A DNA stretch of 64,000 nucleotides from Bispira polyomma. Its lineage: Eukaryota. Positions 22,401-40,886 of the stretch are shown piece after piece (the stretch's first letter is position 1; each line of letters starts with the position of its first letter). Position numbers and translations under genes: made by a program. The DNA lies in contig OZ287752.1 of NCBI GenBank assembly GCA_965649765.1, positions 26,102,001-26,166,000 of the forward strand, given 5' to 3'. The notes beneath the pieces are model-generated. The model saw only the letters and a list, made by a program, of their open reading frames with translations, was not told where the DNA came from and ran no database searches.

Positions 22401-25400
22401 AGTAATAGCTACTTACCTACTTTTGTGTACTCCTTTCGTTTCCGGGCATTTCAAGGAAAAATATTTGACATATCTATACTTTGAGCCTACTCTGAATTGC
22501 ATTTCTGTTTTCACTCTTTTGAAGGAAACATATTTAACTCGTCTTTTTAAATTTGGTATGAAGGTTTATAGCGTCAATTGCTTGCTTGGTATTGTTGTTG
22601 GTGGTAATAGCTTTAACCTCCTGAGTAATAGCTACATAGCAAAAAACATTAATATGTCTATCTCCTAAACCGTGCGAGATAGAGCGATTTCGTCGAAATT
22701 TTCGACCCTGAGGGTATTTAAGCAATGTACTCTTGGCAATTTTGAAAAAAAATTTACTCTCCCCAAAAATGGCGACCATTTTTAATTTTTACCAAAAATG
22801 GAAAAACCTAAATTTGCTTCTATCTTCTTAATCGTGCGAGATAGAGCGATTTTGTCAAAATTTTTGACGCACAGGGTATCTAAGAAATGTACTATAGGCA
22901 ATTTTCAAAAAAAATTCCTCTCCCCAAAAATGGCGGCCATTTTAAATTTTCAAATTTTTGCCAAAACTGGAAAAACACAAATTTATTTCTATTTCCTTAA
23001 CCGTGCGAGAAAGAGCGATTTCGTTGAAATTTTAGACCCACAGGGTATCTAATCAATGTACTCTTGGCAATTTTTAAAAAGTTTTCCTCTCCCCAAAAAT
23101 GGCGGCCATTTTGATTTTTCGAATTTTTGCCAAAAAAAACAAAACAGTCCTGTAAGACTACTGTGCAATTGTTCGAAAAGGTTCATGGGGTGGACATTAC
23201 ACATACTCTTAACAGGGCGTCCTATTTCTAGTTGTCATTTAATTTTATTTTACCACAAAATATCCCGGAAACCAAAATTTATACCCATAATCAAAAGAAG
23301 AAACTATCCCATTCCCAATGGTACATTTTATACTCTTATATAATGTGTACAATAGGAGTGTAACAACCCAGTCTGTTATTGATGCATTTCCATTTATATA
23401 TTATAAGTGCAACCCTGTGTGCATTTATAATTGATAATTTTTGTAACAACCCAGTAAATGTTATTTAGTTTATTCCATTGGTCTATACATTATAAGTGCA
23501 ACATTTTGCTCATTTATTGATTTTTTTACCGCACAGTTGTTTATGGTTGTCAGTGTATTAATGTGCTTGCTCTTTTCTTGTAAAATCCACCCTGTTGTGT
23601 GGAAATTTCTCATTAAGTGGAGGTATTTATTCTGGTTCCTTGAGGTTTTAATTAAAGGGGTTCAACTGTATAAATAATTGAAATGAATTTTAGTGCAAAT
23701 GTAAACTTAGCCTACGCTTCCTTTCAGCCGACCACGACATAGGCCGATTTATTAACATTTAAGCTGTTTCCATGTCTGCCAATGTAGTGCTTTCTTTCAT
23801 CCAATATGTGATGAATATTCATTGGATGTTGATGGTCAAACAGTGTGAGAAAGCAATTTTTTTCGCTCCCAGACCGATAACATCTAAAGTTAGAAGAAGC
23901 ATCTGCCGACATGAGATCGGATATGACAAAAATCAGATGAAAGGAAGCACTTTATCATAACATCAAATAGTGACGGATAAATTTGGCCGACATCGGCCAG
24001 CAAAAATCGGCTAAAACGAAGCGTAAGCTGAGAGCTGTTTTTAATTTTTTATACTGTTTTTTTAAACTTTAGGTGTGTACAATATGAGTGCAATGTGCCA
24101 TGAATTAACTGGACAATGTCAGTGCAAGGACAACGTGGAGGGAGATCGTTGTGAGAGGTACAATAGTAGTTTCTATATCTGAGAAATAATATTTTTATCA
24201 GGCACAGCCTGGTGCCATTAAAAAAGGCGCTGCCATCTTAGAAGTAATATGTAAGGCCTTCATGGATTGGTTGGAAGCAATCCACCTGTCCAAACTGAGA
24301 GGTGTCAGATTTATAGTATCAGACACAGCCACCATGTTGGAAAATATATTTAAGGCCACAATGGATTTGTTGGACTGAGGGGTGTCAGTCACAATGTACA
24401 CCAATGTGTTTTTGAAAAGACAACTACTTAACACAATCCCATGGATATGCTTTTAAAAATGTATATAAAAGTAAGATTAATAATTCCAGTGGTGAGAGGA
24501 TGCAAACATAGAGTGTTTTGCATCCTATTTATTGAAACGCAAGAACTAATTCATTAAGATGGTATTGTGACCTGGTTTCTGAGATGACATTATAATAAAC
24601 ACTGCATCTCATTAGGGTGTTTTTGACCAAGTCCCTTTTTGTGGTAGTTTGTAACACTACAAGGGCGGTCGTAATAGTGTCTGGGTCATAATATTGGCCG
24701 ACGCACGTTTTAATGTATGAAACGTAGATTTCTCAAAAATTAAATATATTATTCTGTAATTTAATTCACAGGTATAAAGTAGCATGTGTTTTCAATATTG
24801 ATTTCCGTCAGTAAGGGTGAAAGAGAGTTGCGCCCCTTGCCGCCGGACGCTACAGGTTGGGTTAACACCCCCGTCTGGTTGCTTTTTCATTAACCAGCTG
24901 TTAACGCCACTACCCTTACGACCTTGCTATGCCCATGGACTTTATGATTGGATCACTGATTCTGCTGTTGCGCTTTAGAAGATGCTTTAGAAGATGCCAT
25001 TATTATGACCTGGACATTATTCTGACCACCCGTGTAATAGCTGTAAAGTTGACCACTGTGTTTTATCATTTATATATAGCTGTAAAGTTAATCACCATAT
25101 GGTTTGTGTTTCATACATACAGCTGTAAAGTTGAGCATTGTATTTTGTATTTCTTATATAGCTGTAAGGTTGAGCACTACAGTCTATCAGAAGATAACCC
25201 CCTGGGCTGTACACCATGTGATTGTCATCCCTCGGGGGTCAAGGACAGTCGCACCGATTGTGATCTCAATACAGGACAGTGTCTCTGTAAAACTTTAGCT
25301 ACAGGTATGATATGATAAATTTGAACTTGTACCTGCTTTGTGACTGTATACATGGCGTACAGTTACGTTAATTGATTCAACACTTTAAAAAAGACTACAT

Positions 25401-28400
25401 ATATGTAGTTTATGGAAATAACCCACAATTGTGATGCAACATTGAGCACCAAATATGCAGGCAGATAATCTTTACCCGAATTCCTTCTTGTGAGAGATAT
25501 ACTGAAACTTGGAGTTGAGTTTGAGTTATTTTGATACTGTTTTGATACTATGGCCAGTTTTGATCAGTGTGTCTTCTGACATTTAACATTAAGAATATAC
25601 CAACCTACAAAAATCTAATAAAAAAATTATTTTTTTTATTCCCATACTAGATTTACAGTGCGATAAATGTGAACCAGGTTACTATGACCTAGATTCCACC
25701 AATGAGGTTGGTTGCTCTCCCTGTAACTGTAACCTTGATGGCTCCCACAATTCCTCATGTGACCTTGAAACCGGTCAGTGCTTCTGTAAGCCAAACATCA
25801 TCGGCCTCTTGTGCGACCGATGTGACAGTAGCTTTTTCGCCCTGAATAATGAGGACTTTATCGAATATGGCTGCAGCCACGCCTGCAATTGTGATGGCAA
25901 CGGAACAATAGGTGGTAGTACAGAATGCGCGGAAATTGGCGGAAACTGCCAATGTCGTCCAAACACCAAGGGCCGGCAATGTGACCAATGCAAGGCGCTG
26001 ACCTATGGTTTCGGCTCGTCAGAAAATAACGGTTGCCGAGCCTGCGACTGCGACACTCGTGGGACGGAGAATGGCGACATCGGCTGTGACTCTACAACGG
26101 GCCAGTGCGAGTGTAAGCTGTACACTACAGAGAGGAGATGTGACACATGTCTGACTGGCTATTATAACGAGACTAAGGAGAATGCCCAGGGTTGTACTTA
26201 CTGTGACTGCTACCCTATAGGGTCAACACAAGATGGGGACTGTGACGAGGTGACTGGGCAGTGTGTGTGTAAAGACAATGAAGGAGACTCGACACTAGGG
26301 GGAAGACAGTGTGTATGTATATAGTTATTATCCACTATGGTATGTACATATATAAGCAAGGAAAATCATAGACCAGGGAACAGTTTTTCTTCATATCCTC
26401 TGCCACCAGTAAAAAATGTATTTGAAAAGTGTAGTATTTCACTGATATTTACAAGGATGTAGTCAGGGTTTTTTGGTGGTTTTTTTTTGGTCGCTATAAT
26501 ATTCAACAGAGAAATCTAACAAAATTCTTTGAAATATATAATACAATAAAACTTTCATTTAATGCCTTCGAATAGTAAACATTTCTCTCTTATGTAATAC
26601 TCAGTACTTTAGTCCATTGAAATTTTACATTATACAGTCCAACCACTTAAGTGGAACTCTGATAAGTCGATTTTCCTGTTATGTTGAAGTAAACCTCTGG
26701 TCCCAGTATGGCATTTTCTTTTAAAATCTACCCTGTTAAGTGGAAGTCCTGCTTAAGTAGAGGTAATTCTTCTGGTCTATTGAGGTTCTACTTAAAGGAG
26801 TTTAACTGCATATGAGCTGAAGGGGACCATGCCTCAAAGTATTTGTTTTGGCTCACTGATCTTACAATGCACACGTGTAGGGTATTCAATTTACATCTAC
26901 AATGCACACATATTCCATGTACAGTACAATGATGAACAATTTTTCCCAGTCCTTTTTTTGCCACCATTAAATTGTACAGTACCTGTGAATAGTAAACATC
27001 TCTTTGTAGCTTTTAAATACACATAACAATTAAAAACTTTTACAGTAACTGTATATACTACCTTTTTACTTATGATCAGTCATATATATAAATATATGTT
27101 ACAGTGAAGCTGTGTAATCACTGATTATGTGTAATTTTTATCAAATACACATAATCTCTGAACTTTAAGTGCCCAAATTTAACAACTTTGCTTAAAGTAG
27201 ATTCAGTAAATAATTTTTTTGTGAAAGAGAAAAATAACTGTTAAATATTTTTCTATTTCTGTTTTTACCAACTTTCTACTATCTCAACAACATCTTACCT
27301 CTTCAAACATGTTTTGGATGTTACAGTTTCCACTGTACGTGTTATATCCTATTTCATATTTTATTTCATTATTCTTTTTAATTTCAGAATGCTTACATCA
27401 CTTCCATTATCCCTAACCGGGGGCCCGAGTCAGGTGGTACAGAGATCACAGTGAGGGGAGGGTACATGGGGAACTCCACTGCTACCATGGTAACCATAGG
27501 AGACATGGACTGTCCTATAGTGGAGGAGAAAAGGTGATATATTTTTTTCAGCAAAAGTGGAGCCAATATTAAAGAAACCAATGTTAATACATTGTGATGT
27601 AACATATATTGTCAAAAAAAATATAATAGTAATATATTAAAAAGTTGAACGATCTACAAAATAATCTGTGCCAGTATTCACAAAAGGGCTGAGTCTAGAA
27701 ATTGTCCTAAATCTAGCACCAAAGTGTACTAGATCTAAGACAATGCCACCACTTAGCCCTGTATTCTTAACTATGGGTCAATGCATTTACATGCAGAGCT
27801 ACTTTATCATACATTACTATCTAATACATGTCACAATTTTAACATTTTTAAAACTGCCTAAAGAAGAGATGTAAAAATTTCCCATCATATTTTTGTGTAA
27901 TACCTGCTAAAATATTGGCATTTAGTGGTCTGAGAATCTCTTTTCAAAAAGGTGACTATAATTAGAGAGGGAGCCTTTATTATGGAAAATACTGTAATAA
28001 AAAAACTATAAAAACGCAGTCACATGATAATGGTTCAGAAATCTGTCATGAGCTTTTTACAACTAATGAAAAAGACCAAAAGTGTGCAGTGAACAGTGCA
28101 CCAGTTGTACGCATACATTATCTTGAGAGTCTATAATCTAATCTAATCAATTCTGTGATGGCGCTTATTCTTCATACTACATGTAGTGGATTCTAAGGCG
28201 TAATAATCAAAATCATCGTTCAGTAGTCTTGTTGTGATGGGCAGAGAGTCATTACCAGAAGCTAATCTCATGCCAGTAAAGTATAATTGATCCGACAGTT
28301 TTGTGTATTTTGCATTTGTTGTGTAGGTCAGCCACCTCAGTGACTTGTATCAGTAGCAGACTAAATGGTACGGACACAGAGTTCCTAGATATACCACAGC

Positions 28401-31400
28401 CAGTGCTGGTCACACTGCCAGATGGACGGGTTATAGACTACAGCTTTGAGTTCACATTTAAACATGACCCAGTCATTCAGACAGTTAAGCCATTGTCTAG
28501 TATACTGAGGTAAGTACATAGGTAATCCATAGTACAGTAGAACCTTTATTATACGATCTTCTATATATTAAACACGACCCAGTCAGTCAGACAGTGAAGC
28601 CACTGTCTATTTTACTGAGGTAAGTTTATGTCATGTAAAGATATCATCTTTGGATACACATTAATATAGACAGCCATTATGAACCTTGTCAGCTAATGGA
28701 TAAATTTTTTGTTGAGCAATTAATTACAATGAAAATTTAAGGGTCTTTATTAGGAGCAAAGGACTGTTTCTAAAGTGGGGGGTAGGGGAGATCTTTTTGA
28801 AAAGAAGTGGAGAGTCTGGAAACAAGTATTCCAGTTTATGTAATCCATAATAATGTAGGACCAAGCCTCCTCTGTCCAGTATACTGAGGTAAGTTAATAT
28901 ACATACAGTAGAACCTCTACTATTCAAACTTCTATTGTCAGAACTTTTGGTTTTAACTACTTTCCAGTCTCCTAAATTTTCGTTTTCCTGTCATTTTATT
29001 CTAAAATACCGGGGCATCTCTTCTTTTTTATGTACCTTCTATTATCCAAACAAAATCTTGGTTTCCAAAGATGTTTGTATAATAGAGGTTCTACTGTACT
29101 TCATACATTTCTCACTCTCAAGTTATACTTACAATGACCTGTATATTTTGTTGTTTGTTTTACAGTGGTGGGATTCCCTTGACAGTAACTGGCATCTTTT
29201 TAGATTCTGTGGCATTTCCTTATTTGGAAATTACCATGGTCTACACCCCAGAGACTGGGCCCATAGAAGAGGCCATGTTTGACACAGTAAGTTTGGTTTA
29301 ATTACATAAAAGACACACACATGGCTATAATAGGACAAAGGGGCATGTACATTGCAATTTTTTGGTTAAGTATTATTTGTAAACAGAGTTTGGAATTGTG
29401 ACTAGTATATTTTAAATGTATCTTCCTTAATTGCAAGCTTTGAAAATAGGAGTTGCTCTTCATAATATGTGGTTTTAATTATTTTCTGTAATGCTAGTAT
29501 ATTTAATTGAGTGGAGTTACGAGAACTTGTGAAATATATATAATTTACTCACTGTCTTAAACTTTTGTCTCAACCAATTTGGTTAGCTGAAAATATTGTT
29601 TTAATAAATTTGATTGGCTGAGACTAAGCAAATTATAAGAATTGTATTCTAAGAATGTTTGTGAACATGGCCCCCTGGTTTTATCACTAGGCAGGTGTTT
29701 GTTTGCTTTTTATGGTCACTATTTGGCAAAAATGCCATCTATTTACTGTAGTGTAAAGGAGCTTTATTGGTGCAGTACTACAACACTCACCTCCCACCTC
29801 TAATGTCCTGGTTCAAAACTCGGCCAGGCTTTAAGTGGGAAAGTTGGCACTTTTACCGATGGTCGCTGGTTTATAGTGTAGAATGTTGACGACCTAGTAT
29901 ACTCTGGTTTTCTCCAGCACTCCAACTGCCCATCGTAATGTGACCTATACAATGTGTTAAAAGCGATGTTAAATCTAAAATTAAAAAACAATACACAATG
30001 TAAACTGACATGGTGTTAGACACAGTTTAATAATTTGGGTAAAAAATTTATAGTCGATTTAGACACGTACAAATATAATTATTATTGCCTTGTAAATATT
30101 AATATAATGAAAATTAAAGTTGTATTTTAATCAACATGTGTTAAAATAGGATTTTGAATTACAGGAGACATTTGATTGATTAAATCAGATGGCCAATATC
30201 GAATTTAAAAGGTTATTGAATCAACAAGAACCAACTGCAGGCTTTGTGCAATTATTAGTATAAGTGTAATACATTATTTTATAACATTGCAGACTAGGTG
30301 TGGCTTTTATCTCAATTCTAACTTAACTTCACAATTAATACTTATGCCTAAAATTCATAATGCAGAACATTTACAAAATATCATAGAGGGTTGTATGCAT
30401 ATGATATATAGGCAGCCAGTGTGCATTATCGTTTCAGATGAATGTGTGCGTATAGACCAGAAAAGCGGCATTTCTACGCAACTCATTATGTTAGAATGTA
30501 AAACATAAGAACATTTTATCAAATAAATACCTATTTATTTTCCAGCTCTGTGCTGTGCAGTCAAACTTCGAAATGATCTGTCCCACCCCAAACATCACCT
30601 TACCTGAGAATTATAGAGCACCTGCAAGGAGGAAGCGTCAGACTGATACAACAGCCAATGAGTTTAAACTTAACAGTGACAGTTTGGAGTTTCTGATAGG
30701 CTTTCGACTGGATGGTGTAACAGACTATTTAGACTTAACCAGTCTCAGACCGGAATACAGTATTTTAACTGTGTATATCAATCCAGAATTTGAATCCTTT
30801 GAAGGAGATGGAATCAAAGTCTACAGACCGTACTGGCCATTTAATGATGACCATATTGCAATCAAGGTGGATTGAGATTTACATATTTTTGTCTGGGTAG
30901 CATGCTAACATTAATACACAATAGACCTTGGTTCGATCCCAGCCTGGCGCAACCCGGTTACAGGCAGAGGCATAGTGACTTGAATGACCACTAATAATTG
31001 CTAGTCCCCTGTCATTGGGTTATACCCCCAATCGCAGATGGTCATAAATGGTCATCCTAAAGCCTCTTTTTGCAATTAAAAGAATGACTGTTGTTTCTGG
31101 TTGACTGTACTTGGGCATTTTAAAAAAGGTGAATTAGTGCTTTAAATACCAGAGAAAGGTAGACGAATGCACTGAATATAAAATGGAATACAATACAATA
31201 CCAAATTATTGTGGGAGTTTAACTTTTAATAAATTTGTATTGTAATGTCATGATAGACATTATATTGGTGGAGAAAAGCGAAACAAAAAGTAGATTTTTT
31301 AAAACACCAGCCTTCACTAATTCTACAGGAACCTTCCCACATACATACTGTGGGTGAGATTAGAACCCACAACTGCAGAGGCTTCACTTCATCATTAATT

Positions 31401-34400
31401 GAAGCTTGCTATTATTTATCCTGTCACAAAATACAATATGTTTCTGTTGTCTAAACCTTTGTTATCTAAATATTTATTTTTAAGAAGATCCACAGATCCA
31501 CAACTTTATAATGGCGTTGTTTTATAAGTACATTAGTGATAATTAAAACACATAAATGTACACATTGTTAAATAGCTAAATCTTGTCCTTTTTAATACAG
31601 GGAGAAAGGCTTAACTACGGGGCTACAATGAGTGACTATAAAGTGACTATTGGAGATGCTGAGTGTACAGGTTTAGAGCTCACAGAGAACAGGATCTACT
31701 GCATCCCTCCAGACTCACAGCCAGGCATGTCAGAGTACGGAGACAAGGACGGGGCACCTGCATTTCTGGTAAATACATTGTACACTAAAGTTGATATATT
31801 GATTTAAACTTGTACTCGCAATGATTGACCCTTGTCTGGTACTTCAATTCTCACATGACACTGCTAGTGCTATATTACATGTAATTTATAAAAGAAGGTT
31901 CCAATATTTAGCTTCATATATGAGAAGGATGTCTTTAAATATTTCCCTATTTAGACCCTTATTCTCAAATTCATACTTGGCTTAAGTACATCCGGAGCTG
32001 TCTTCTCAAATCCAGACAATACTCAATTAGGGCAATGTATAAATTCCTCTATTTGGACAGAACTGATCACTCATTTTAATAATAGTGCTTTCATTGCTAA
32101 ATTCAAATACAGTCAAACCTCTTTAAGTGGAAATCTGATAAGTGGAATTACCTATTAAGTAGAAGTTATTGCAAGGTCCCAGTGCTATATTTCTAATTAA
32201 AATTTACCCTATTGAGTAGACTTTCTGTTAAGTAGAACAAAATGTTTATGGTCCCTTCAGATATAACAGGGTTTCACTGTGTGTAGTTAGATTTCACTTT
32301 ACATCCCTCTAGCCAGAGATAAGGACACCTTATATATAGAGTTCAATCTCAGTATAAGTTTGACTGGAAATTTTTTAGAGAAAATGGCCACTGTTTTTAC
32401 GGAAAGGCAAGCTACCACTCAGTGAACCATAGACTAAACCCCCCAAATGTTTTTTGGGTATTTTTATATTACAGATCAAAGTAGGCAACATCAAACACTT
32501 GGCCGGCTATTTAAAGTACGAGACGTCTTTCTGGGAGAATACAGTATTTCGTTGGAGTGTCGTGGGAGGCCTTATCTTGGTTGTCTTGATCATTGTCATC
32601 ATCATTATTGCCTGCTGTGTGTCCAAACACAGAAAGAATAAGGACAAAAGTACCAAGGAGAAAGAGCACCCCAAAATACTGGATCAGTTTGACCATTTCG
32701 ATCACTTTGACAACCACATTGGTAATGGACTGAACAACGGAAATGTCAACATCGCCATGCAGGAGAACCAGTACGTCACTGACCACTCAACGACGCTTCC
32801 AATGCCACCGAAAGCTGCCAGCAACGCATACACGGCTCCACCTCCATCCAGTTTCCAGCCGACCACTTTACCGATGCCACCTCGTAAGCACGAGTTCACT
32901 GCACCACCACCAGTAGCAGCTAAAAAGCCTCACAGGAGGGAGCAAGGTAAAGCCGGAGTTTTAACAGCTGAAGTTGTGATTTGTCTCCTAGCTTGTTTGT
33001 TAGCAGGTTTACGCAAAAACTTTATTGCGAATATTGAAGTTAAACTATTGTGATTATGTTTATACCATGTTTTCATCAGCTAATCTAAATATAACATGAA
33101 CATGTATTGTATTCTTCTCTAATTTACTAGTTTTAGAGAAATTCAGTGGAATTAATTTCACTATTGGTCATTTTTTGTGTTAAAATATTACTACAAATTA
33201 GAATTTTCACTGAGAATTAATTTTCACTATCTAAGGCCATTAGGCTAAAAATAGCTAAAACTAATTCCTCCTAGTAAACCTTGGGGGTCGCGATGGCCTA
33301 GTGGTTAGCAAATATTGCATTTCACAATTACTGGTCTCTCACCTCTGGGATCGGCTGGCATGGGTTCGACTCCCGACGATACCTATGTGGGAAAGGTGGT
33401 AGTTCCTTACTGTTGACTGCTGGTTTCAGTGCAGAATCTTGATCAACTGTATGCAATGTTTCCTCCAGCATTTCCAACTACCCGTCCCAATATAACCTAA
33501 ACAGGTACTAGAGTGGACGTTAAATATCCCAATTCAAAAAATAATTCCTGGTGAACCTTATACCACTTTAATAGAGCTGTTTCTCCCTTGTACGGTCTTT
33601 ACGCTTTCTGCGTTTAGACATATGTTTTGCACATGTATTACGGGATCAACATTTTTGTAATTAATTTTGAAAATTACTACTTAAACAGAGCTGTTTATCC
33701 TTAGTACTGTCTTCGCTGTTTCTATGTTTAGACATAGTGGACGTTAAATATCCCAATTCAAAAAATAATTCCTGGTGAACCTTATACCACTTTAATAGAG
33801 CTGTTTCTCCCTTGTACGGTCTTTACGCTTTCTGCGTTTAGACATATGTTTTGCACATGTATTACGGGATCAACATTTTTGTAATTAATTTTGAAAATTA
33901 CTACTTAAACAGAGCTGTTTATCCTTAGTACTGTCTTCGCTGTTTCTATGTTTAGACATATGTTTTTCATATTGTATTATAGGGTCAACTTCTTCCTACT
34001 TAAACCCCATGATGACACCGCAGATATTTGAAGTTATTACAGCAGAACTCAAGTACAAAGTAGATCAGGTTTCTGTGGAAGCCAACCGGTTGCAACTGGG
34101 CAAGGTAGTTCAACAAGGTAATGCATATACTGTGTAACCATCAAACTTTGCCACTGTATCTGAAATTTGCCACCTAGATATTGTGTTTTGTTTGGTAGAA
34201 TTGTAGATAACATTTGCTAAAACTGGAATTTTTGTGACTATTTTTGCCTTACTTACCTAAATCCCAGTTCTTTTTCGCCAGTTTTTTTTTTTATTGATTT
34301 TGGCTTAAATGTTAGATGTGGCGTATTTTAGATACAGTGGCAAATTTTAGATTCCTTACTCTATCACATAAAATGTTGTTGGTTCTTTTGCCTACACCTC

Positions 34401-37400
34401 ATATCTTGAATGGCATATAATAAAGAATATCTAGAAAACAAAATTTCAAACTTTGTTAAGTTTGATTCAGTGGATGCATATATAATTTCTGAATACTTGG
34501 CACAGACTCATATTCCCTACCCAAGGCCATGTTAAGGTTATTGTACAATTTGTTATTTCAATAACCAAAGTCATCGCCTTAAATATTTTATAATGTTTGG
34601 CGCATAATATTATTGAATAATATCATATTAGTGGTTGTGTAAAATAGGTGATATGTTAGCAACAGTTGAATTTAAATTTCATTATTGATCACTAAATGAA
34701 TATAAACATAACTATTTATTTTAAATCAATCTATATTTGTTTGTTTATTTCAGGCAAAGTTGGTCAGATCTGCACATGCATGTTTCTGGATAAATACCGT
34801 TCCCAATCCAAGCCTGTGTTAGTGAAAACATTGTCGGGTAAGAATATTATATTGGAGAGAGTAGATTAAAGATCACTAAAATACAGTTCAAACCTATAGT
34901 TAAAACCCAAACTTAACCCTTTGACCCCAAGAGAAATCTATCACCAAGAACTGAAGGATATTTTGGAGGGTAGTTGCTACAGATAGCTGGAGTTACTAAA
35001 ACATACACCACAGACTACTTCCGGCATTCAATAATTGTTTTTTTAACCGAGAAGTCTGCTGTAATATCAATTTCCTATTGCCAGGAACTGAAGGAAAATA
35101 AAACCTGTCGGCAAACAGGTTCTGGGAGTAGGAACTTGCTGACAATCTAGGGATCAAAAGGGCCAACCTCTGTAATATTGCAAATTCTAAGGCACGTTGT
35201 AGTAGATTTAATATAACGGTGCAGCTTTTTTTGTCGTTGTATAAAAAGTAGAACTATTTTTGAGGTTATAAATATAATGTACTACATGCTTCCATAGTAT
35301 TTTAAATAAATAATCGTTACATTTCTAAAGCTTAAAAATATGAATTTTTGCATAGAAACCCAACCCCCCAGTTTTTCTAGGTGGATAACACAACAGACGT
35401 CAGAAATTATCATGGAAATTTTATTGTAATTAGATTCTTTTTCTCAAATTTTTGTGTCTTGATCATTTCAATTAGTTGAAAATTATTATTGTTTCAAAGA
35501 ATCTGATACAATCGAAGTCTTCTTTTTTTTTACAGAAAGTGGAATGGTGCCTCGAGAAATCCAGCACTTTCTAGAAGATTCCATCATGCTGAGAGCACTG
35601 CACCATCGTAATGTGGTGGGATTACTAGGTATTATAGTGGAGAACAACCAAGTCTACTCAATATCACCTAGTATGGAGAATGGGAACCTGAAGACTATGA
35701 TTACTAATGAAGAAAATGTAAGTACACTTTAGTAACCTTAAGAGAGGCAATAGACTCTCTGTTTCTTTTGTTAAACCCTCCAGGAAGGCTGGATCCAAAG
35801 ATTTCTCCATTGCAGCTCCCTTCTGATAGAACAGTCTTCCAGTCAATGATCAGATCATCAGACACACTTATCGGTTTTAGGAAAAAGCTTAAAACCTATC
35901 TTTTTAACCTGGCATTTCCACCGTAGTTTTCCCCCTATACAACCCCTGCATCCTTCTTGTGACCTTGCCATGTCCATGGTTCACACGATTGGATCAGTGA
36001 TTCTGCTATTGTTTTTAAGGAGACGCCTAGCATCAATAAAGACATGTTAAAAATGCATAATAATAATAATAATATGTGCATATTGTTACATTAATTTTAT
36101 GTGAAAATGACTTTTATTCCTTCTACATATTCGCTGAATTTGTTTCAGTGAATAAATGTAACAACTATCTAATAATATGAGGGAATGTATGTATTCCCTG
36201 ATTACACATACTCACTGTAACATATATATAGGATGATTGGATGTGTTAACATAGATAATTACAAAAATTACAGTAGTGAAACCTCTACTTTTTGAATATG
36301 CTTGGTGAGAAAGAGCTTGTTTAGTCCTAAGATAGGACCTTATGTCTTTTCCAGCGGTTAACCGTTGACATGACGTTAGTGTGCAGATACGCAATTTTTC
36401 ACTGAGGTCCCTATTTTAGGGCTAGAGCTTGTTTGGATAATAGATGGTTCATAAAATATAGAAGATGTATTCCTGAATAGAACAATAGCAAAACAAAACA
36501 TTTGGGAGACCGAAAATGGGTTGATAAAATTGAATATTAAGACAATAAAATTTCAGATAATAGAGGTTCTGCTGCCTTGCACTAGTTGATACATGTACAG
36601 TAGAACCTCTATTGTCTGAAGTTCTACCATCTATATCTATATGTATTTGATTTTCCGAATTACCCTATTGATCCCTAGGGGCCGCGGTGGCCTAGTGGCT
36701 AGCAAGCATTGCGCTTCACAATCACTGGTCTCTCACTTCTGGGATCGGCTGGCGTGAGTTTGACTCTCATCGATGCCTATGTGGGAAAGGTGGTAGTTCC
36801 CTACTGTCGGCCGCTGGTTTCAGTGCAAAACCTTGATCAATTGTACGAAAATGCTTTCTCCAGTGTTTCCAACTACCCATCCCGATATAACCTAAACAGG
36901 TGCTAGAGTGGATGTTAAATATCCCAATTCAAAAACATTCAATTCCTATTGATCCCTAGGTTGTTGGCAATCAATCAAAAGCATTGAATTATTTGTTACT
37001 CTCACAACCTATGTCTGTTGGCAAACAGTCCACACCCCAAAAATATTACATTTTTCTTAAGCTCCTCACAATTAGAAAATTGTTAGTACAACAGACACAT
37101 TTGTTCAAAAAAATTGTATGTGATCCTGTTATTGAATGCTGAAAGTATATCTGAAACCTATTCCTGAAAACATTTCCTTCAATTCCTGGCAATAGTTTTC
37201 TCTTGGGGTCAAAAGGGTTAATATAGGCATACAATATGATCTACACCCTCCCCCCCCCCCTCCTCCCTGTGAACTTCTTCTCTGTTTCTTTGTGCTTTAG
37301 AAGATGCCTCGCATCAATAAGGCACATCAAATTGTTGTATAAAATGCATGTACATAATGTACTCATAGAAATGCCCACAATATATTTTTAGTCTGAAATC

Positions 37401-40400
37401 TTGTTTTATTTAACTCGTGTCTACTATGCACTCACTAAATTATTGTCTAAATTTGTTGCCAATGTATAATGTACTCCTACAGATGCTGACTGTTGGCGAA
37501 CTAATACAGATGGCTCTACACATATCTACCGGTATGGCCTTCCTCTCAGACTCCAAGGTTGTACACAAAGACTTGGCAGCCAGAAATTGTGTGTAAGTAA
37601 AGTGGTTTACTGGGATCATGAATTATCAAGTTGGTAATGTTTGTTTTTGGATTTTTGTGGGATCGTCATATTGGCTCAAATTACCACTTAAGATGGATGT
37701 CCTCTGTCATTGCAACCTATCACCAGAGGCAAGCCAAAGAACATTGGAGACATTTATATTTATACATGGTGTCATCATCAAGCCTCTTTCTCTTCAGTTA
37801 GAGGAATGACAGTTACTAGTGCTGCTTCACTGCTTAATTTAGCAGTCAAGAAAAGATTAATCTCTAACATAAATACCCAATAAAGGTAGACAAATATGTT
37901 GAGTATACATTTGAATACAATACAAGATGTAACATTTACAGGGTTGATAAAGACTTAGTGGTCAAAATCAGTGACAGGGCCCTGTCACGTGACCTCTACC
38001 CACAAGCTTACTGGAAAGGTGCAGATATGAAGCGACCAATGCCAATACGGTGGATGTCACTGGAAAACCTAGAAATAGATGTGTTTACCAGTAAGAGTGA
38101 TGTGGTAAGTGGCTGCCATTTTATCGTAGATTCAGATTTGTACCTACTTTTATCTTTAATTTCTAAAGTTAAAGTTTTAATTTATATTCTGCCCCTATGT
38201 TATGGAATAGTCTCCCAGTTGAGATAAGATCCCTAGAAACACATTCTGGGTTTACAAGAAAAGCTAAAAACCCATCTCTTTAATCTCGCCTATTCCCTTT
38301 CATTTCCACATCCTTCCTTATGACATTAGCTGTGTTTTTGGACTTGTCTATTGGCTCACTGATTCTGTTGTTGTGCTTTAGGAAATGCCTTGCATTAATA
38401 AGGCAAGTTAAAATTGCGGATTACAATACAATATTGTGAACCATTTATGTAGCAGTAACTTTGTTCAAATAGATCCTTTATGGTGCTTGTTCTCTGAAAG
38501 ACAGTATAGTATCGCATGAACAAAGCATGGGTTGTCAGTGCAAGAAAATCGTCAAAAAGATCGTGGAAAAGATTGTGGCCTCTGTGGCCTAGCGGTTAGA
38601 TTGTCAGACTTGAGGGATCTGAGGGTCCCAGGTCGATCCTCACCGCAGGCCTGGAAATTGTACCCTCGGACAAAGTGCTTTACACAAAGTTGTCCCTCTC
38701 TGCCCGGGTGTTTAAATGGCTAACTTGCCTCTAATGGGTGTTAGTATTTATGCAGCGTATGTAGCAGCACAGCTAAGTATGCTTCCTGAGGGAGCTGCGA
38801 CTGAAAAATTTGTTAACAAGTGGAAAAACCCAGGCTGGGGGTGTAAATTGTCAAGTCGGATGGGACCTCAATAAAGCTGATATCAGACTATAAAACTAGA
38901 CACATTTACACATTCACAATTGAATTGTGTGGTTGACAGTTAGTCTTCTATCTAGTGTAGTTGAATATTGACTATATTTCAGTGGGCATTTGGAGTGACT
39001 CTGTGGGAGTTACTAACCAGAGGTTGCACACCTTACCCTGACATCAACACTAATGGGGTCAAGAACTTCCTCCTCTGTGGAAACAGAATGGACCGGCCTG
39101 ACTTCTGCCCAGAAGACTTGTAAGTACAGCTGTACTTTAGTTACACAAAGCTTAGGTACATAAATAGTAAATGCCAGTTTTAACAAGAAAAATGTAAATT
39201 AATCTATCCACTTTTATTTGCACAGGTTTTACTCGATATTAAAAGCAAAGATTGTTGATATGTTCATACCTGAAAAAAATGACATTGCTACCCATTCATT
39301 ATCAAATTCTGTTTGAAATCTGTGTCATAACTTTCACAGCTGTTGCCTATTACTAGCTCACCTACCCTTGCTACAAGCTTGTCTTTCTCTCAGTAATCTC
39401 AATATGTTTGATACAATAGGGATTATACTGTATTTTATTTACATGAATTCTAGCATTAGTTCATCAGTATTAACTGTAAATTTAAAATGAGAAATGTAGA
39501 AAACAGTCTGTTTACTTAAAGTGGTTCGTAAAAGGATTTATGAATCATCATAGATCCACATGTAGGGGAATCCTGCAGTTGCTTAGTTGTTAGCAGTTAG
39601 CGTTCCTCTACAAACATTTGCCCTCTCACCCATGTAGATTTGAATCCCATTAGTTCCTTCATGTGGGACAGTTTGTCAGGTACTTTTACCGGTGGTTTTA
39701 CATTGTTTTAGTACTGGTTTTGTCCACCGTTAAATGACATAGGGATGTGTTGAAAGTGACGTAAAACTCATTAGATTCAAAATTATTAAAGAAAACAAAT
39801 GTTGATATGTGGATGAGTAACATTTTTAATAGGTGAGGCTAGCAAGGCTAGTCTAAGGCTAGTCTCACTTATTGATGGGGTGGTGCGGATTTCGTGTTGC
39901 GACAGCATTTACGTGAAATTGGCCCGAAAATTTCACTTTATGCTTACAATGTATTCTTTTATAATTCTAGGGATAATGCAGTCGATTTGTTTTCTTAATA
40001 AAAAATTATAATAATCGTCTAAAAATACTGACCTAGGTTGACATGGGTTTGACCTATATAGTCACAAAGCTCATTTCCTAGGCTTGCTAAAGGCCCATCA
40101 TTTTTCCGTGTTATAAAGGGCCGCATATTGGCGAATAATCAATGTCGATATGTGGATGAGTAACATAATTTTTTTAAATTAAGTGTAATAAGTGTGTAAA
40201 TTTATGAACTATCCAAAGATATATCTGGGAACTTAACCATATGTGGAAGCAATTTACAGGCTGATCTAAAAATTATCACAATTATTCAATATAAGTCACT
40301 ATTTTAACATTGCCACCACATTGCTTAGTGCAGGGGAGATTTACGTATTAGTTTCCATTATATTTATCATGTAGTATAACCAACCTGGCCTCTAATGGGC

Positions 40401-40886
40401 TTTAGTCCTTGTGCGTCGCATGTGGCAGCACGGCTAGTATGCTCTCGAGGGAGCTGAGACTGAACAATTGGTGACCAAGTAAAAGAATCCAGGCTGGGGT
40501 GTAAACTGTACAGCGCCTTGTGAAAAAAAGCGCTTTATAAATTTACATTTACATTTAGTATACGTGCTACAATATTGGCATTTTACTGATCTAAAAATTA
40601 ATTAAAAAAGACAAAACAATTAGACAGGGGCGTGCCTTTATTACAGGAAATATGGTATATGTTTTATTATTTTTTGGTGTTGTTTTTTATCAAAAGGTAC
40701 ACTTTGATGCTGAATTGCTGGCACGAGTCTCCACGGCAACGACAAGGGTTTCACGAGATCACCGACAATATACAGAGATATTTAGACTTACAGAACACTA
40801 AGACTAACCTGAGGAAGAAGTCCAGTCAACAAGTGCCCAGTGCTAGGATAAAAGGCAATAACCACCTGCATCTCTACAACTTCTAA
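12961..40886 (+). CDS. Usherin-ectodomain / IPT / MET-RYK-like (pseudo)kinase receptor, 26 coding exons, 1736 aa
   Basis: join(12961-13496,14676-14826,15263-15383,16497-16560,16922-17083,17994-18126,18531-18718,19967-20176,20518-20734,21542-21668,24073-24157,25162-25304,25651-26312,27388-27533,28327-28509,29166-29286,30546-30866,31601-31768,32475-32946,33983-34117,34754-34837,35536-35717,37483-37592,37942-38104,38983-39119,40697-40886). All introns GT-AG with compatible phases; total 5211 nt; no internal stops seen. Confidence 0.88.
14676..14826 (+). CDS. Receptor exon 2 (LamG-like)
   Basis: tacag|G TVAEITS...QWNHVTLQ|gtaaga. Confidence 0.85.
15263..15383 (+). CDS. Receptor exon 3 (LamG-like)
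   Basis: [12 protein letters not shown]...[10 protein letters not shown]|gtaaaa. Confidence 0.85.
16497..16560 (+). CDS. Receptor exon 4 (end of LamG-like domain), absent from the ORF track
   Basis: [21 protein letters not shown]; acacag| and |gtgagc. Confidence 0.85.
16922..17083 (+). CDS. Receptor exon 5
   Basis: [26 protein letters not shown]...FCVQN, matching the usherin CRCP..HP...C linker. Confidence 0.88.
17086..17450 (+). repeat. ~130-140 bp tandem repeat, about 3 copies, starting at the exon 5 donor
   Basis: GTGTCTG.GA.TTAAGGACTATACCATGA...GAATGTTA...GTAGGA.CACA repeated. Confidence 0.8.
17994..18126 (+). CDS. Receptor exon 6 (laminin N-terminal domain)
   Basis: [19 protein letters not shown]...[10 protein letters not shown]|gtaagt. 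Confidence 0.9.
18531..18718 (+). CDS. Receptor exon 7 (laminin N-terminal domain)
   Basis: [21 protein letters not shown]...[11 protein letters not shown]...DDVTC. Confidence 0.9.
18709..19476 (+). repeat. ~43-44 bp minisatellite (about 17 copies) built from the exon 7 splice donor
   Basis: Unit AGCTTCTAGTAGAGTGAGTATGGCAGTAATCAATGTGAATTGTT. Confidence 0.92.
19967..20176 (+). CDS. Receptor exon 8 (laminin N-terminal domain)
   Basis: FDLLKGRPG...[14 protein letters not shown]...[11 protein letters not shown]. Confidence 0.9.
20518..20734 (+). CDS. Receptor exon 9 (laminin-EGF 1-2)
   Basis: [35 protein letters not shown]. Confidence 0.9.
21321..21498. mobile_element. Tc1/mariner-type MITE
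   Basis: TA|CAGTAGAACC...GGTTCTACTG|TA; relatives at 28906-29096 and 41686-41875. Confidence 0.75.
21542..21668 (+). CDS. Receptor exon 10 (laminin-EGF)
   Basis: [39 protein letters not shown]. Confidence 0.9.
21888..23232 (+). mobile_element. Helentron/HINE-like non-autonomous element with two internal tandem-repeat arrays
   Basis: T-rich start, 5' palindrome ATGTCCACCCC-AGTG-GGGGTGGACAT, GTCC motif, 3' subterminal IR GGGGTGGACAT (23187-23197), terminal CTAG followed by TT; ~140-bp and ~165-bp internal repeats. Confidence 0.75.
23709..24029. mobile_element. MITE with ~23-bp imperfect TIRs
   Basis: AGCCTACGCTTCCTTTCAGCCGA / TCGGCTAAAACGAAGCGTAAGCT. Confidence 0.6.
24073..24157 (+). CDS. 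Receptor exon 11 (laminin-EGF)
   Basis: [20 protein letters not shown]. Confidence 0.9.
25036..25180 (+). repeat. Four tandem copies (39/43/39 bp spacing) of the exon 12 acceptor
   Basis: AG|CTGTAA(A/G)GTT with AG ending at 25040, 25079, 25122 and 25161. Confidence 0.88.
25162..25304 (+). CDS. Receptor exon 12 (laminin-EGF)
   Basis: [25 protein letters not shown]...TGQCLCK. Confidence 0.9.
25651..26312 (+). CDS. Receptor exon 13 (laminin-EGF 4-8, last repeat truncated)
   Basis: [11 protein letters not shown]...GGRQC|gtatgt, phase 0. Confidence 0.92.
27388..27533 (+). CDS. Receptor exon 14 (IPT/TIG 1), absent from the ORF track
   Basis: [28 protein letters not shown]...VTIGDMDC, the canonical IPT P..GP.SGGT.IT..G pattern. 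Confidence 0.9.
28327..28509 (+). CDS. Receptor exon 15 (IPT 1-2)
   Basis: SVTCISS...[19 protein letters not shown]. Confidence 0.9.
28906..29096. mobile_element. Tc1/mariner-type MITE
   Basis: TA|CAGTAGAACCTCTA...TAGAGGTTCTACTG|TA. Confidence 0.75.
29166..29286 (+). CDS. Receptor exon 16 (IPT 2)
   Basis: [19 protein letters not shown]. Confidence 0.9.
30546..30866 (+). CDS. Receptor exon 17 (IPT 2-3, RRKR site)
   Basis: [15 protein letters not shown]...ARRKRQ...IGFRLDGV...VYINPEF. Confidence 0.9.
31601..31768 (+). CDS. Receptor exon 18 (IPT 3)
   Basis: [22 protein letters not shown]...IYCIPP. Confidence 0.9.
32475..32946 (+). CDS. Receptor exon 19 (transmembrane helix and Pro-rich juxtamembrane)
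   Basis: IKVGN...[30 protein letters not shown], basic stop-transfer KHRKNK. Confidence 0.9.
33283..33540 (+). mobile_element. tRNA-derived SINE (family A)
   Basis: A box TGGCCTAGTGG, B box GGTTCGACTCC, shared body TATGTGGGAAAGGTGGTAGTTCC; copies at 36678 and 62606. Confidence 0.85.
33513..33960 (+). repeat. Apparently identical 224-bp tandem duplication
   Basis: 33513-33736 matches 33737-33960 by eye. Confidence 0.9.
33983..34117 (+). CDS. Receptor exon 20 (juxtamembrane and kinase start)
   Basis: STSSYLNP...[11 protein letters not shown]|gtaatg. Confidence 0.82.
34754..34837 (+). CDS. Receptor exon 21 (kinase subdomains I-II)
   Basis: GKVGQIC...PVLVKTLS. Confidence 0.88.
34913..35165. 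mobile_element. piggyBac-like MITE remnant
   Basis: TTAACCCTTTGACCCC terminus and inverted GGGATCAAAAGGG; related pieces near 17500-17770 and 37150-37221. Confidence 0.5.
35536..35717 (+). CDS. Receptor exon 22 (kinase subdomains III-V)
   Basis: [26 protein letters not shown]...PSMENGNLK. Confidence 0.9.
35731..36073 (+). mobile_element. LINE 3'-end fragment with (TAA)n tail, same family as 8117-10037
   Basis: Reverse-complement similarity to 8120-8460 (AAAAGCTTAAAA.CTATCTTTTTAACC); TAA tail; smaller pieces at ~24915-25000 and 38190-38420. Confidence 0.75.
36678..36945 (+). mobile_element. tRNA-derived SINE (family A)
   Basis: GGGGCCGCGGTGGCCTAGTGG...; flanked by the direct repeat CCTATTGATCCCTAGG, a probable TSD. 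Confidence 0.85.
37483..37592 (+). CDS. Receptor exon 23 (catalytic loop)
   Basis: [36 protein letters not shown]. Confidence 0.93.
37942..38104 (+). CDS. Receptor exon 24 (activation segment)
   Basis: [18 protein letters not shown]...PIRWMSLE...FTSKSDV. Confidence 0.93.
38572..38912 (+). mobile_element. tRNA-derived SINE (family B)
   Basis: GTGGCCTAGCGGTTAG...GGTCGATCC head and ACATTT tail; 3' parts recur at ~16220-16450 and ~40378-40556. Confidence 0.7.
38983..39119 (+). CDS. Receptor exon 25 (kinase subdomains IX-X)
   Basis: [21 protein letters not shown]...[14 protein letters not shown]. Confidence 0.93.
40697..40886 (+). CDS. Receptor exon 26 (kinase subdomain XI and tail)
   Basis: [21 protein letters not shown]...HLYNF*. 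Confidence 0.9.

What the first reader, a model, noticed from the sequence alone, without database searches (positions are those of the whole stretch)
33983..40886. Kinase domain looks MET-derived but carries RYK-like pseudokinase substitutions
Seen: Gly loop QQGKVG (vs GxGxxG), VLVK with Lys kept, alphaC FLED (Asp where Glu is expected), HKDLAARN (vs HRD), [10 protein letters not shown] (vs DFG), activation loop QAYW without the twin tyrosines, and no YVHV/YVNV docking tail. Established: RYK has [14 protein letters not shown] and DNALSRDLFP and is catalytically impaired; WELxTRG..PYPD is typical of MET/RON. From memory, the six kinase intron positions match MET's. Inference: either a MET-lineage kinase that converged on RYK-like inactivation or a RYK-related kinase recruited as a third module; probably a scaffold or co-receptor.
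Basis: partly seen in the sequence, partly recalled or inferred. Interest (0 to 1): 0.75.

Follow-up and report, generated by a model that had tools for sequence, protein, structure and literature searches.

The report
MET-type receptor with degenerate kinase
A receptor gene in this unnamed animal genome ends in a MET-family kinase domain whose ATP-handling motifs have decayed much as in the Wnt co-receptor RYK, so it probably signals without phosphorylating; no dead-kinase member of the MET family turned up in the papers searched, but the principle is a known one.

Summary
Seven exons (33983-40886, +) with canonical splice sites encode a complete tyrosine-kinase fold reading [32 protein letters not shown] and QAYW. 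In 108 MET-family kinases aligned here, the matching positions are invariant (G, E, R, D-F-G, Y-Y).

The domain is of MET lineage, not RYK lineage.
- Summed over exons, it is 46% and 43% identical to two MET-like paralogues of the same genome, and 34% to that genome's true RYK (a WIF-domain gene on another contig).
- Three of four per-exon trees place it with MET-like genes.
- The IPT exons just upstream match only MET-like genes.

They match RYK as well, so they decide nothing.

The changes are not private to this assembly. Two DNA samples give identical exons. Exon-sized fragments from three or four other unnamed sources are its reciprocal best matches and read DCA, DAS, DRA or DSA.

Loss of catalysis is inferred only. 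The catalytic Lys, Asp, Asn and Asp are all kept, and no RNA data or full-length orthologue could be reached. The exons were never joined, so there is no whole-domain tree or fold.

The scan's only other notes (s1-616380, s1-616415) are on this same window; nothing was noted on other DNA.

The parts
33983..34117 (+). Kinase exon A: end of the juxtamembrane region, beta1, and the first half of the Gly loop (...LQLGKVVQQ + 1 nt of Gly)
   Evidence: ORF and splice sites. The phase-1 intron in the second Gly codon is shared with METl, C6b and RYK. No Pfam or PDB hit on its own.
34754..34837 (+). Kinase exon B: G-KVG...VLVK (beta3 Lys kept)
35536..35717 (+). Kinase exon C: alphaC (FLED, Asp at the invariant Glu column), beta4-5 and hinge (SPSM where MET-family genes have LPFM)
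   Evidence: Pfam E 2.8e-7. In the PDB search RTKC8 scores 33 bits and MET 22.8. The tree pairs it with C6b at UFBoot 91. Column table.
37483..37592 (+). Kinase exon D: alphaE and catalytic loop HKDLAARNC
   Evidence: Pfam E 3.2e-10. PDB InsR 33.2, MET 30.3, RYK 30.0 bits. The HRD Arg is 108/108 in the MET panel.
37942..38104 (+). Kinase exon E: DRA (in place of DFG), activation loop DLYPQAYW, ...[18 protein letters not shown]
   Evidence: Pfam E 2.5e-10. PDB RYK 36.7, MET 33.8 bits. Orthologous fragments P0001-P0003. Tree.
38983..39119 (+). Kinase exon F: [20 protein letters not shown]... (alphaF-alphaG), the most MET-like exon
   Evidence: PDB MET 53.1 bits, above Mer 45.8 and RON 43.4; RYK is not among the 60 listed. 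It is 57% identical to the own METl gene. The tree pairs it with METl at UFBoot 88.
40697..40886 (+). Kinase exon G: ...[15 protein letters not shown]..., a tail of about 35 residues ending LYNF, and the stop codon
   Evidence: Pfam E 0.0061. The PDB search is uninformative.
32475..32946 (+). Context: TM helix (about 32559-32621) and a Pro-rich juxtamembrane exon. The 5' end is not fixed; the 3' end is at 32946.
   Evidence: ORF. Only weak TM-type Pfam hits. Donor GAG CAA G|GTAAAG.
27367..31804 (+). Context: IPT/TIG exons (ORFs at about 27367-27519, 28301-28513, 29134-29301, 30555-30872, 31583-31804)
   Evidence: Pfam TIG E 2.2e-6. tblastn to the METl IPT exons gives E 6e-12 and 4e-8. Exon 30555 hits only two MET-like genes in the whole genome. 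MET panel hits.
12961..26324 (+). Context: signal peptide, LamNT pieces, a possible LamG-like piece, and laminin-EGF repeats (ORF-level only)
   Evidence: Pfam Laminin_N at E 0.0074, 0.049 and 0.00049; EGF_laminin at 3.9e-23; Laminin_G_3 at 0.049. Laminin alpha5 LN in the PDB at E 0.0026.

Best explanation
The stretch encodes the intracellular domain of a single-pass receptor. Its membrane-proximal IPT domains, TM helix and kinase fold descend from a MET-family receptor. Its outer ectodomain is laminin/usherin-like (LamNT plus laminin-EGF) rather than Sema-PSI.

The kinase fold is intact and under constraint, but positions that are invariant in active MET-family kinases have changed:
- the first Gly of the Gly loop is Gln
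- the alphaC Glu is Asp
- the HRD Arg is Lys
- the DFG Phe-Gly is Arg-Ala
- the second activation-loop Tyr is Trp
- a Pro follows at DFG+9

Most of these are the changes seen in RYK. They were most likely reached independently.

Inferred mechanism. With no hydrophobic DFG Phe and no DFG Gly, the domain cannot adopt the active DFG-in state. It probably holds an autoinhibited-like, ATP-poor conformation. It would then signal without catalysis: as a partner that is phosphorylated by, or allosterically tunes, an active kinase (the MET-like paralogues are candidates), and through its Pro-rich juxtamembrane segment.

Shown here: anatomy, motifs, lineage, and conservation of the DFG loss in relatives. 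Inferred: loss of activity, the partner, the ligand.
For: Gene structure and motifs.

Lineage:
- In the own genome the best matches to exon F are six MET-like loci (45-57% identity). RYK ranks 13th of 19 at 42%.
- For exon E the best are C6:46.07M (54%) and C6:64.78M (49%). RYK is not among the 12 matches and is 37% identical by tblastn.
- Summed local scores over exons A-F are W-METl 548 (46% identity), W-C6b 546 (43%) and W-RYK 384 (34%), against METl-RYK 458 (41%).
- Per-exon ML trees: exon C pairs W with C6b (UFBoot 91). Exon F pairs W with METl (88). In exon E, W sits in a clade of non-DFG fragments (83) beside METl, C6b and C4:68.51, apart from RYK.
- The IPT exons are homologous to METl IPT exons (E 6e-12 and 4e-8). 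Genome-wide, exon 30555 matches only two MET-like genes.
- Human MET scores 53.1 bits for exon F; RYK falls below the 41.7 bits of the last listed row.

Not private to this assembly:
- The contig pieces listed across exons A-F show 0 differences: exons A-F in X1 and X3 (two samples), B-F in X2. All 25 substitutions and 9 indels are intronic.
- P0001, P0002 and P0003 (61-67% identical, with the same exon end) read DCA, DAS and DRA. W exon E is their best match in this genome by 12-23 bits; for P0055 (DSA) the margin is 8 bits.

Analogy: in the review's Table 2, human RYK is QXGXXG, HKD and DNA with an occluded ATP site, and HKD recurs in PTK7, ROR1, ROR2 and STYK1 (PMC13259870, passages read).
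Against: - No activity, ATP-binding or expression data exist. No RNA run holds the stretch.
- The beta3 Lys, the HKD Asp, the catalytic-loop Asn and the DRA Asp are all retained. By the strict three-residue definition this is not a pseudokinase.
- A MET-family HMM does not by itself claim the domain. W scores 105.9 bits on exons E+F, close to RYK (97.1) and to two non-MET paralogues (101.8 and 98.4). MET-like paralogues score 123-171.
- The 36-residue exon D groups with RYK, weakly (UFBoot 55).
- For exon E, human RYK outscores human MET (36.7 against 33.8 bits).
- W shares with RYK a Pro at DFG+9 that is absent from 108 of 108 MET-family sequences. This could be inherited rather than convergent.
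- No full-length orthologue was reached, so the architecture is known from one genome only.
Confidence: 0.55

Rival explanations
1. The kinase belongs to the RYK lineage. The RYK-like features (QxGxxG, D-x-A, Pro at DFG+9, loss of the second loop Tyr, HKD) would then be inherited from a common pseudokinase ancestor. The module was either joined to IPT domains later or kept them while RYK swapped them for WIF.
For: - Exon E scores highest against human RYK (36.7 against 33.8 bits).
- Exon D pairs with the own RYK (UFBoot 55).
- The Pro at DFG+9 is shared with the own, crab and human RYK, and is absent from 108 of 108 MET-family kinases and from 11 active paralogues.
- All six introns are shared with RYK.
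Against: - Identity to the own RYK is 34%, lower than METl-RYK at 41% and W-METl at 46%.
- Exons C and F pair with MET-like genes at UFBoot 91 and 88, and the exon E clade is separate from RYK.
- For exon F, RYK ranks 13th of 19.
- The own RYK has HRD and DRG, so HKD is not ancestral to RYK.
- The adjacent IPT exons are MET-type.
- The introns are shared by MET-like genes as well.
Confidence: 0.12
2. The domain is still a working, atypical tyrosine kinase. Because Lys, Asp, Asn and Asp are kept, it could phosphorylate with low or unusually regulated activity despite DRA and HKD.
For: - All four catalytic residues are present.
- The first loop Tyr and the DLY Tyr are conserved across the relatives.
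- The fold is under constraint: 24 of 54 exon E columns are invariant across the 7 sequences of alignment A1 (W plus 6 fragment sequences in 3 clusters).
Against: - The DFG+1 residue varies freely among relatives (R, C, A, S). That is not expected if a regulatory spine must assemble.
- G1, the alphaC Glu, the HRD Arg and the DFG Phe-Gly are 108/108 in active family members.
- Human RYK, with the same pattern, is listed with an occluded ATP site (PMC13259870 Table 2).
Confidence: 0.2
3. The kinase exons are a decaying relic or an assembly chimera, and not part of an expressed receptor.
For: There is no RNA evidence. Its exon E has no 100% match in the protein representatives library (best 67%), so the gene seems absent from it.
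Against: - Seven open exons have canonical splice sites and continuous phase from the TM exon onward.
- Relatives elsewhere conserve exon E and its exon end.
- The gene is single-copy in the genome.
Confidence: 0.05

Closest known systems
MET/RON (HGF receptor) family, including the invertebrate 'hepatocyte growth factor receptor-like' genes
   Same: - IPT/TIG stalk, single TM helix and kinase fold
- all six kinase introns in the same position and phase as the MET-like genes of this genome
- the WELLTRG..PYPD signature
- 36-59% identity per exon (C-G) to mollusc, tick, spider and annelid MET-family proteins
   Different: - No Sema or PSI. The outer ectodomain is LamNT plus laminin-EGF.
- Positions that are invariant in 108 of 108 family members are changed.
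- No YxxV docking tail.
RYK / Derailed (WIF-domain Wnt co-receptor pseudokinase)
   Same: - motif pattern QxGxxG, HKD (human), D-x-A
- Pro at DFG+9
- loss of the second loop Tyr
- the same six intron positions
   Different: - No WIF domain. The genome's only WIF hits lie on contig C10, next to a separate RYK gene.
- Only 34% identical to that RYK.
- A different C-terminus.
Other receptor tyrosine pseudokinases (PTK7, ROR1/2, HER3, EphB6/A10, STYK1)
   Same: HKD catalytic loop (PTK7, ROR1/2, STYK1), VLVK (PTK7), and a degenerate DFG within an intact fold (PMC13259870 Table 2). The likely mode of action is non-catalytic signalling with an active partner; that point is recalled for HER3-HER2.
   Different: A different kinase lineage and ectodomain. 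None of the eight human receptor pseudokinases listed in that review belongs to the MET family.
Usherin / laminin / netrin LamNT-laminin-EGF proteins (ectodomain only)
   Same: LamNT followed by laminin-EGF repeats. Here it is supported only weakly (Laminin_G_3 at E 0.049).
   Different: Those proteins have no IPT stalk and no kinase domain (recalled, not tested).

Membership tests
MET/RON receptor family | Sema and PSI domains in the ectodomain | tested here: not met
   Eight full-length MET-family proteins were run by tblastn against the window. The four whose rows were printed hit only the IPT and kinase exons; their N-terminal ~630 residues (Sema/PSI) match nothing at E<=0.01. Pfam finds Laminin_N and EGF_laminin instead. 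Not every ORF was scanned with Pfam.
MET/RON receptor family | IPT/TIG repeats before the TM helix | tested here: met
   TIG at E 2.2e-6. Homology to METl IPT exons at E 6e-12 and 4e-8. Genome-wide, only MET-like genes match exon 30555.
MET/RON receptor family | Kinase domain closest to MET-family kinases | tested here: inconclusive
   For: with exons C, E and F placed among MET-like genes. Against: the MET-HMM score of exons E+F (105.9) is no higher than that of RYK or of two non-MET paralogues, and exon D pairs weakly with RYK. No whole-domain tree was made, because the exons were not joined.
MET/RON receptor family | Catalytic motifs GxGxxG, alphaC Glu, HRD, DFG and twin loop Tyr | tested here: not met
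   W has Q, D, K, R-A and Y-W where 108 of 108 family members have G, E, R, F-G and Y-Y.
MET/RON receptor family | Bidentate YxxV docking site in the tail | tested here: not met
   The tail ends ...HLHLYNF. The motif is present in only 28 of the 108 MET-family sequences examined, so it is a weak criterion.
RYK / Derailed | WIF domain in the ectodomain | tested here: not met
   PF02019 matches the genome only at C10:16520858-16522615, not in this window on C5.
RYK / Derailed | Kinase domain closest to RYK orthologues | tested here: not met
   34% identity to the own RYK against 46% and 43% to MET-like paralogues. The crab RYK fragment P0020 best matches the own RYK, not W.
RYK / Derailed | QxGxxG, HKD, D-x-A motif pattern | tested here: met
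   QQGKVG, HKD and DRA against Table 2 of PMC13259870. The own RYK itself reads TEGTFG, HRD and DRG.
Receptor tyrosine pseudokinase (functional class) | Loss of at least one of the beta3 Lys, HRD Asp or DFG Asp | tested here: not met
   All three are retained (VLVK, HKD, DRA). The definition is taken from the abstract of PMC13519141 as shown in the listing.
Receptor tyrosine pseudokinase (functional class) | No phosphotransfer activity or an occluded ATP site | not testable with these tools
   This needs biochemistry or a structure. No fold was predicted, because the exons were not joined.

The most novel reading that the evidence does not exclude
This gene and the non-DFG exon fragments that cluster with it form an unnamed, multi-taxon clade of MET-derived receptor pseudokinases. 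The fragments read DCA, DAS, DRA and DSA, and more loosely DAT, DGT and DSA.

The clade would have arrived independently at the RYK solution: QxGxxG, HKD, D-x-A, Pro at DFG+9, and loss of the second loop Tyr. That would be a repeatable structural route to a closed ATP site.

In this lineage the fold is wired to a laminin/usherin-type ectodomain. The receptor could then couple extracellular-matrix contact to the active MET-like paralogues, much as HER3 serves HER2.
Probability: 0.3. Interest if true: 0.7.

Novelty: new variant of a known kind. Interest (0 to 1): 0.5.

Why it matters
Receptor pseudokinases are few. A recent review counts eight in humans, none of them in the MET family (PMC13259870). 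How they signal is still being worked out.

This would be a MET-lineage example that repeats the RYK set of substitutions, including a Pro at DFG+9. That Pro is absent from 108 of 108 active relatives. It would be a natural replicate for asking which changes suffice to lock a tyrosine-kinase fold into a non-catalytic state.

It would also be a domain combination (laminin-type LamNT/EGF on a MET-type stalk and kinase) that four literature searches did not find described.

Tried and rejected
- **Full-length orthologues were not reached.**
  - The one representatives search, with exon E, gave exon-sized fragments and canonical MET proteins.
  - The search for homologous proteins with the kinase region of a database MET protein (P0093) listed only the best 120 of 7456. 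These were canonical MET-family proteins and, by their listed names, a few other kinases (a sponge RTK, Shark, an ephrin receptor); none listed Laminin_N or EGF_laminin among its Pfam domains.
  - The same tool with the exon D ORF found no candidate. That is a blank, not evidence.
  - The JGI metagenome scan found none.
  - I considered padding an alignment with a long first row to get round the length window of the search for homologous proteins, and did not do it.
- **Expression.** No RNA run was found, and the laid runs are DNA contigs.
- **PDB.** Exon A gave no hit. Exon G was uninformative, with FGFR2 at 18.9 bits and E 0.019.
- **MET-family HMM as a classifier**. W exons C-F score 182 bits, against 152 bits for Pfam's generic model. 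On exons E+F, however, W does not stand above RYK or two non-MET paralogues. I do not lean on this test.
- **Per-exon trees**.
  - They were made only for exons C, D, E and F, with 26, 26, 44 and 35 rows.
  - Rows covering less than 80% of an exon's columns were dropped.
  - Exons A, B and G were not run.
  - Deep nodes are poorly supported (17-45).
- **C6b ectodomain.** It was not identified in the ~43 kb fetched upstream of its first kinase exon.
- **Rejected: a RYK exon acquired by conversion.** Within exon E, only the first ~15 residues look RYK-like (8 of 15 identical to the own RYK). METl matches 7 of those 15, and the rest of the exon is MET-like.
- **The joined step was left out, as instructed.** Per-exon scores were summed instead.
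- **Not checked.** Human MET exon sizes and the position of RYK next to MET/AXL on the human kinome tree are recalled only. Supplementary files of papers were not opened.
Full report
**What is there**

The window is G000:C5:26102001-26166000 of a 1.04-Gb eukaryotic assembly. On the + strand, seven open stretches between 33983 and 40886 form a complete tyrosine-kinase fold. The exons are A 33983-34117, B 34754-34837, C 35536-35717, D 37483-37592, E 37942-38104, F 38983-39119 and G 40697-40886, ending in a stop.

Every intron has an AG acceptor and a GTAAG or GTAAT donor, and the phases are continuous. The upstream exon, with a TM helix and a Pro-rich juxtamembrane segment, ends at 32946 in phase 1 and so fits exon A. 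Pfam finds PK_Tyr_Ser-Thr in exons C-F (E 2.8e-7 to 1.9e-10) and weakly in G.

Further upstream, ORF pieces give Laminin_N (three weak pieces), EGF_laminin (3.9e-23) and TIG (2.2e-6). One LamNT piece matches the laminin alpha5 LN domain (E 0.0026).

**The observation**

I aligned the exon pieces, as separate rows, to an HMM built from 45 non-redundant members of a panel of 108 MET-family kinase domains. That panel came from the database hits. In the 108 sequences the first Gly-loop Gly, the alphaC Glu, the HRD Arg, each of D, F and G, and both activation-loop Tyr are present 108 times out of 108. The window has Q, D, K, D-R-A and Y-W.

Three small corrections apply:
- One Tyr of the twin pair is kept.
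- The absence of a YxxV tail says little, because only 28 of the 108 have such a motif.
- WE.xT[RHK]G..PYP is indeed a MET-family mark, present in 93 of 108.

**Is it private to this assembly?**

No RNA run holds the stretch. Three DNA runs from two samples of one study do; one of them may be the assembly's own source.

Laid on 33950-39949, their listed contig pieces cover exons A-F with 0 differences in X1 and X3; for X2 no listed piece covers exon A. All 25 listed substitutions and 9 indels fall in introns, mostly in high-copy repeats. Exon G was outside the laid stretch.

More telling is a profile-free search of 1.84 billion representative proteins with exon E. Its best hits are exon-sized ORF fragments from unnamed assemblies. 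P0001 (67% identical), P0002 (61%) and P0003 (63%) have the same ...SDV|V exon end and read DCA, DAS and DRA in place of DFG.

Compared with the 13 exon-E pieces taken from this genome (W and 12 paralogues), W is their best match by 12-23 bits. For P0055 (DSA) it is best by 8 bits.

A second set reads DAT or DGT (P0015, P0030, P0046, P0067, P0104), and P0040 and P0064 are also non-DFG. For those scored (P0015, P0040, P0046, P0064), W ties METl (P0040) or leads by no more than 3.5 bits.

Of the 150 listed hits, 116 read DFG. My pattern failed on 25; of those, P0040, P0055 and P0064 (read by eye) are non-DFG, and the rest shown keep DFG or are unrelated.

So the loss of Phe-Gly is old and shared, and the residue after Asp varies freely.

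**Lineage: MET or RYK**

The genome has a true RYK. The WIF family matches only C10:16520858-16522615. Kinase exons 16-27 kb downstream on the same strand read TEG|TFG, VYVK, HRD and DRGLARDLFP, with the RYK-type end FAVMACCWALNPAERP.

W is a single-copy gene.

- **Exon F.** Its best paralogues are six loci that a MET-family HMM scores highly (45-57% identical). RYK is 13th of 19 at 42%.
- **Exon E.** The best are C6:46.07M ('C6b', 54%) and C6:64.78M ('METl', 49%). RYK is not among the 12 matches and is 37% identical by tblastn.
- **Summed scores.** Exon-wise local scores over A-F are W-METl 548 (93/202 identical), W-C6b 546 (95/219) and W-RYK 384 (73/214). METl-RYK scores 458.
- **PDB (human proteins), bits:**

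| Exon | Best family | MET | RYK |
|---|---|---|---|
| A | no hit | - | - |
| C | choanoflagellate RTKC8 33 | 22.8 | not among the 60 listed |
| D | InsR 33.2 | 30.3 | 30.0 |
| E | RYK 36.7 | 33.8 | 36.7 |
| F | MET 53.1 (Mer 45.8, RON 43.4) | 53.1 | below the last listed row (41.7) |
| G | FGFR2 18.9, uninformative | - | - |

  The nominal top row for exon F is an EGFR tandem construct whose 58.5 bits sum two 28-bit stretches, so it is not counted as the best family.

- **Per-exon ML trees** (LG+G4, 1000 UFBoot). Exon C pairs W with C6b (91) inside the MET-family group. Exon F pairs W with METl (88). In exon E, W joins P0003 (69), then P0001 and P0002 (74), then P0055 (94), then the DAT/DSA fragments (83). 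That clade sits next to METl, C4:68.51 and C6b and apart from RYK plus crab RYK. Exon D pairs W with RYK at a weak 55. Deeper nodes are poorly supported.
- **Upstream IPT exons.** The ORFs holding window exons 30555-30872 and 31583-31804 match METl's IPT exons in the same order (E 6e-12 and 4e-8). Genome-wide, the first of them matches only METl and another MET-like gene at C4:68.52M.
- **No Sema or PSI.** Of eight full-length MET-family proteins run against the window, the four whose rows were printed match only IPT and kinase exons.

Together this makes the IPT-TM-kinase part one MET-type block with a foreign outer ectodomain. The gene therefore has two modules, not three.

**Evidence against the MET reading, stated plainly**

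- The MET-family HMM gives W 105.9 bits on exons E+F. That is no better than RYK (97.1) or two non-MET paralogues (101.8 and 98.4), while MET-like paralogues reach 123-171.
- Over exons C-F, W gains only about 30 bits over Pfam's generic model (182 against 152).
- W and its closest fragments share with RYK (own, crab P0020, and human in the alignment) a Pro at DFG+9. That Pro is absent from 108 of 108 MET-family kinases and from the 11 active paralogues examined.
- I read this as convergence, because similarity to RYK is confined to the ATP and activation-segment motifs. A sister relation to RYK is not excluded.

**Introns**

Against this genome's METl and C6b, all six match in position and phase.

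They match RYK as well: the phase-1 split of the second Gly-loop codon, phase 1 after K-T-x-x, phase 0 before exon D (with a 7-residue insertion in RYK upstream of it), phase 2 after ...RNC, phase 0 after ...SDV, and phase 2 after ...PDE/PED.

The shared structure says that RYK and MET-like genes are related. It cannot tell them apart. Human MET was not examined.

**How it probably works**

The fold is conserved. In alignment A1, 24 of 54 exon-E columns are invariant across its 7 sequences (W plus 6 fragment sequences in 3 clusters).

The DFG Phe is part of the regulatory spine (established knowledge). Here it is replaced by Arg, Cys, Ala or Ser in different relatives. The DFG Gly, the first Gly-loop Gly, the HRD Arg and the alphaC Glu are also changed.

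A review's Table 2 lists human RYK as QXGXXG, AFVK, HKD and DNA with an occluded ATP site. It shows HKD in PTK7, ROR1, ROR2 and STYK1, and VLVK in PTK7 (PMC13259870, passages read).

By analogy, I infer a kinase fold that binds ATP poorly or not at all and signals as a scaffold or partner. It may be phosphorylated on the retained loop Tyr by an active kinase, and it may use its Pro-rich juxtamembrane repeats (TLPMPP...TAPPP, twice).

The catalytic Lys, Asp, Asn and Asp are all kept. Residual or unusual activity therefore cannot be dismissed (rival, 0.2).

**Known or new**

Four full-text searches found no receptor that combines LamNT, IPT and a tyrosine kinase, and no MET-family pseudokinase. 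The one paper holding both Pfam names lists them in separate tables (PMC4224354, two passages read). Supplementary files were not seen.

The lineage is poorly annotated: a neighbouring gene has only three unnamed homologues. An annotated orthologue may therefore simply be missing from the libraries.

I file this as a new variant of a known kind: a receptor pseudokinase-like domain, MET-derived, with RYK-like substitutions.

**Limits**

There is no whole-domain tree, no topology test and no predicted structure.
- The architecture is seen in one genome.
- No expression data exist.
- The scan's other notes (s1-616380, s1-616415) concern this same window. Nothing was found on other DNA.

Noticed in passing
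G000:C10:16495000-16523000 (loci L025-L027, L030): This genome's true RYK (WIF domain plus kinase) reads TEGTFG, VYVK, HRD and DRG, where human RYK is listed as QXGXXG, AFVK, HKD and DNA. The RYK signature is therefore itself variable between lineages. A crab RYK fragment reads DTA.
   Followed up: partly
window 37970-38000 and relatives (exon E, DFG+9): A Pro nine residues after the DFG Asp is shared by this gene, four related fragments and three RYKs. It is absent from 108 of 108 MET-family kinases. No explanation was tested.
   Followed up: partly
G000: C4:43.22M, C4:43.36M, C4:68.51M, C6:46.07M, C6:64.78M, C11:27.34M, C14:23.67M: At least seven loci carry MET-like kinase exons with HRD and DFG, which is an expanded MET-like family. 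C4:43.36M scores highest against the MET-family HMM and may be the true MET orthologue.
   Followed up: partly
L037:2946-3114 (G000:C6:46048945-46049113): The Gly-loop exon end of the C6b paralogue (...LTLGEIIGSG) appears three times in tandem within about 170 bases.
   Followed up: no
window 32700-32946: The juxtamembrane segment carries a twice-repeated Pro-rich motif (TTLPMPP...[YF]TAPPP). These could be SH3/WW-type docking sites.
   Followed up: no
window 47223-48254 (-): A 344-aa single-exon ORF has only three homologues among 5.8 billion proteins (76%, 48% and 47% identical). All are unnamed and none has a Pfam domain.
   Followed up: partly
window 525-1941 (-): Two adjacent ORFs encode a RING/B-box (TRIM-like) protein.
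   Followed up: no
window 34150-34550, 35750-35950, 36550-36950, 38150-38950: Intronic repeats have very high summed contig depth in the DNA runs (up to about 1e6 in 36550-36950) and many variant copies. They are interspersed repeats inside the kinase introns.
   Followed up: no
window 8514-10026 (-) and 51558-52876 (-): ORFs here resemble the tail ends of retroelement polyproteins. The same motif (...RIQNHLSIDTAITVANALVSSRLDYCNSLL...) recurs near the C6b locus.
   Followed up: no
window 59800-61700: An AT-rich low-complexity stretch (GC 0.24-0.30) with strong GC and AT skew.
   Followed up: no
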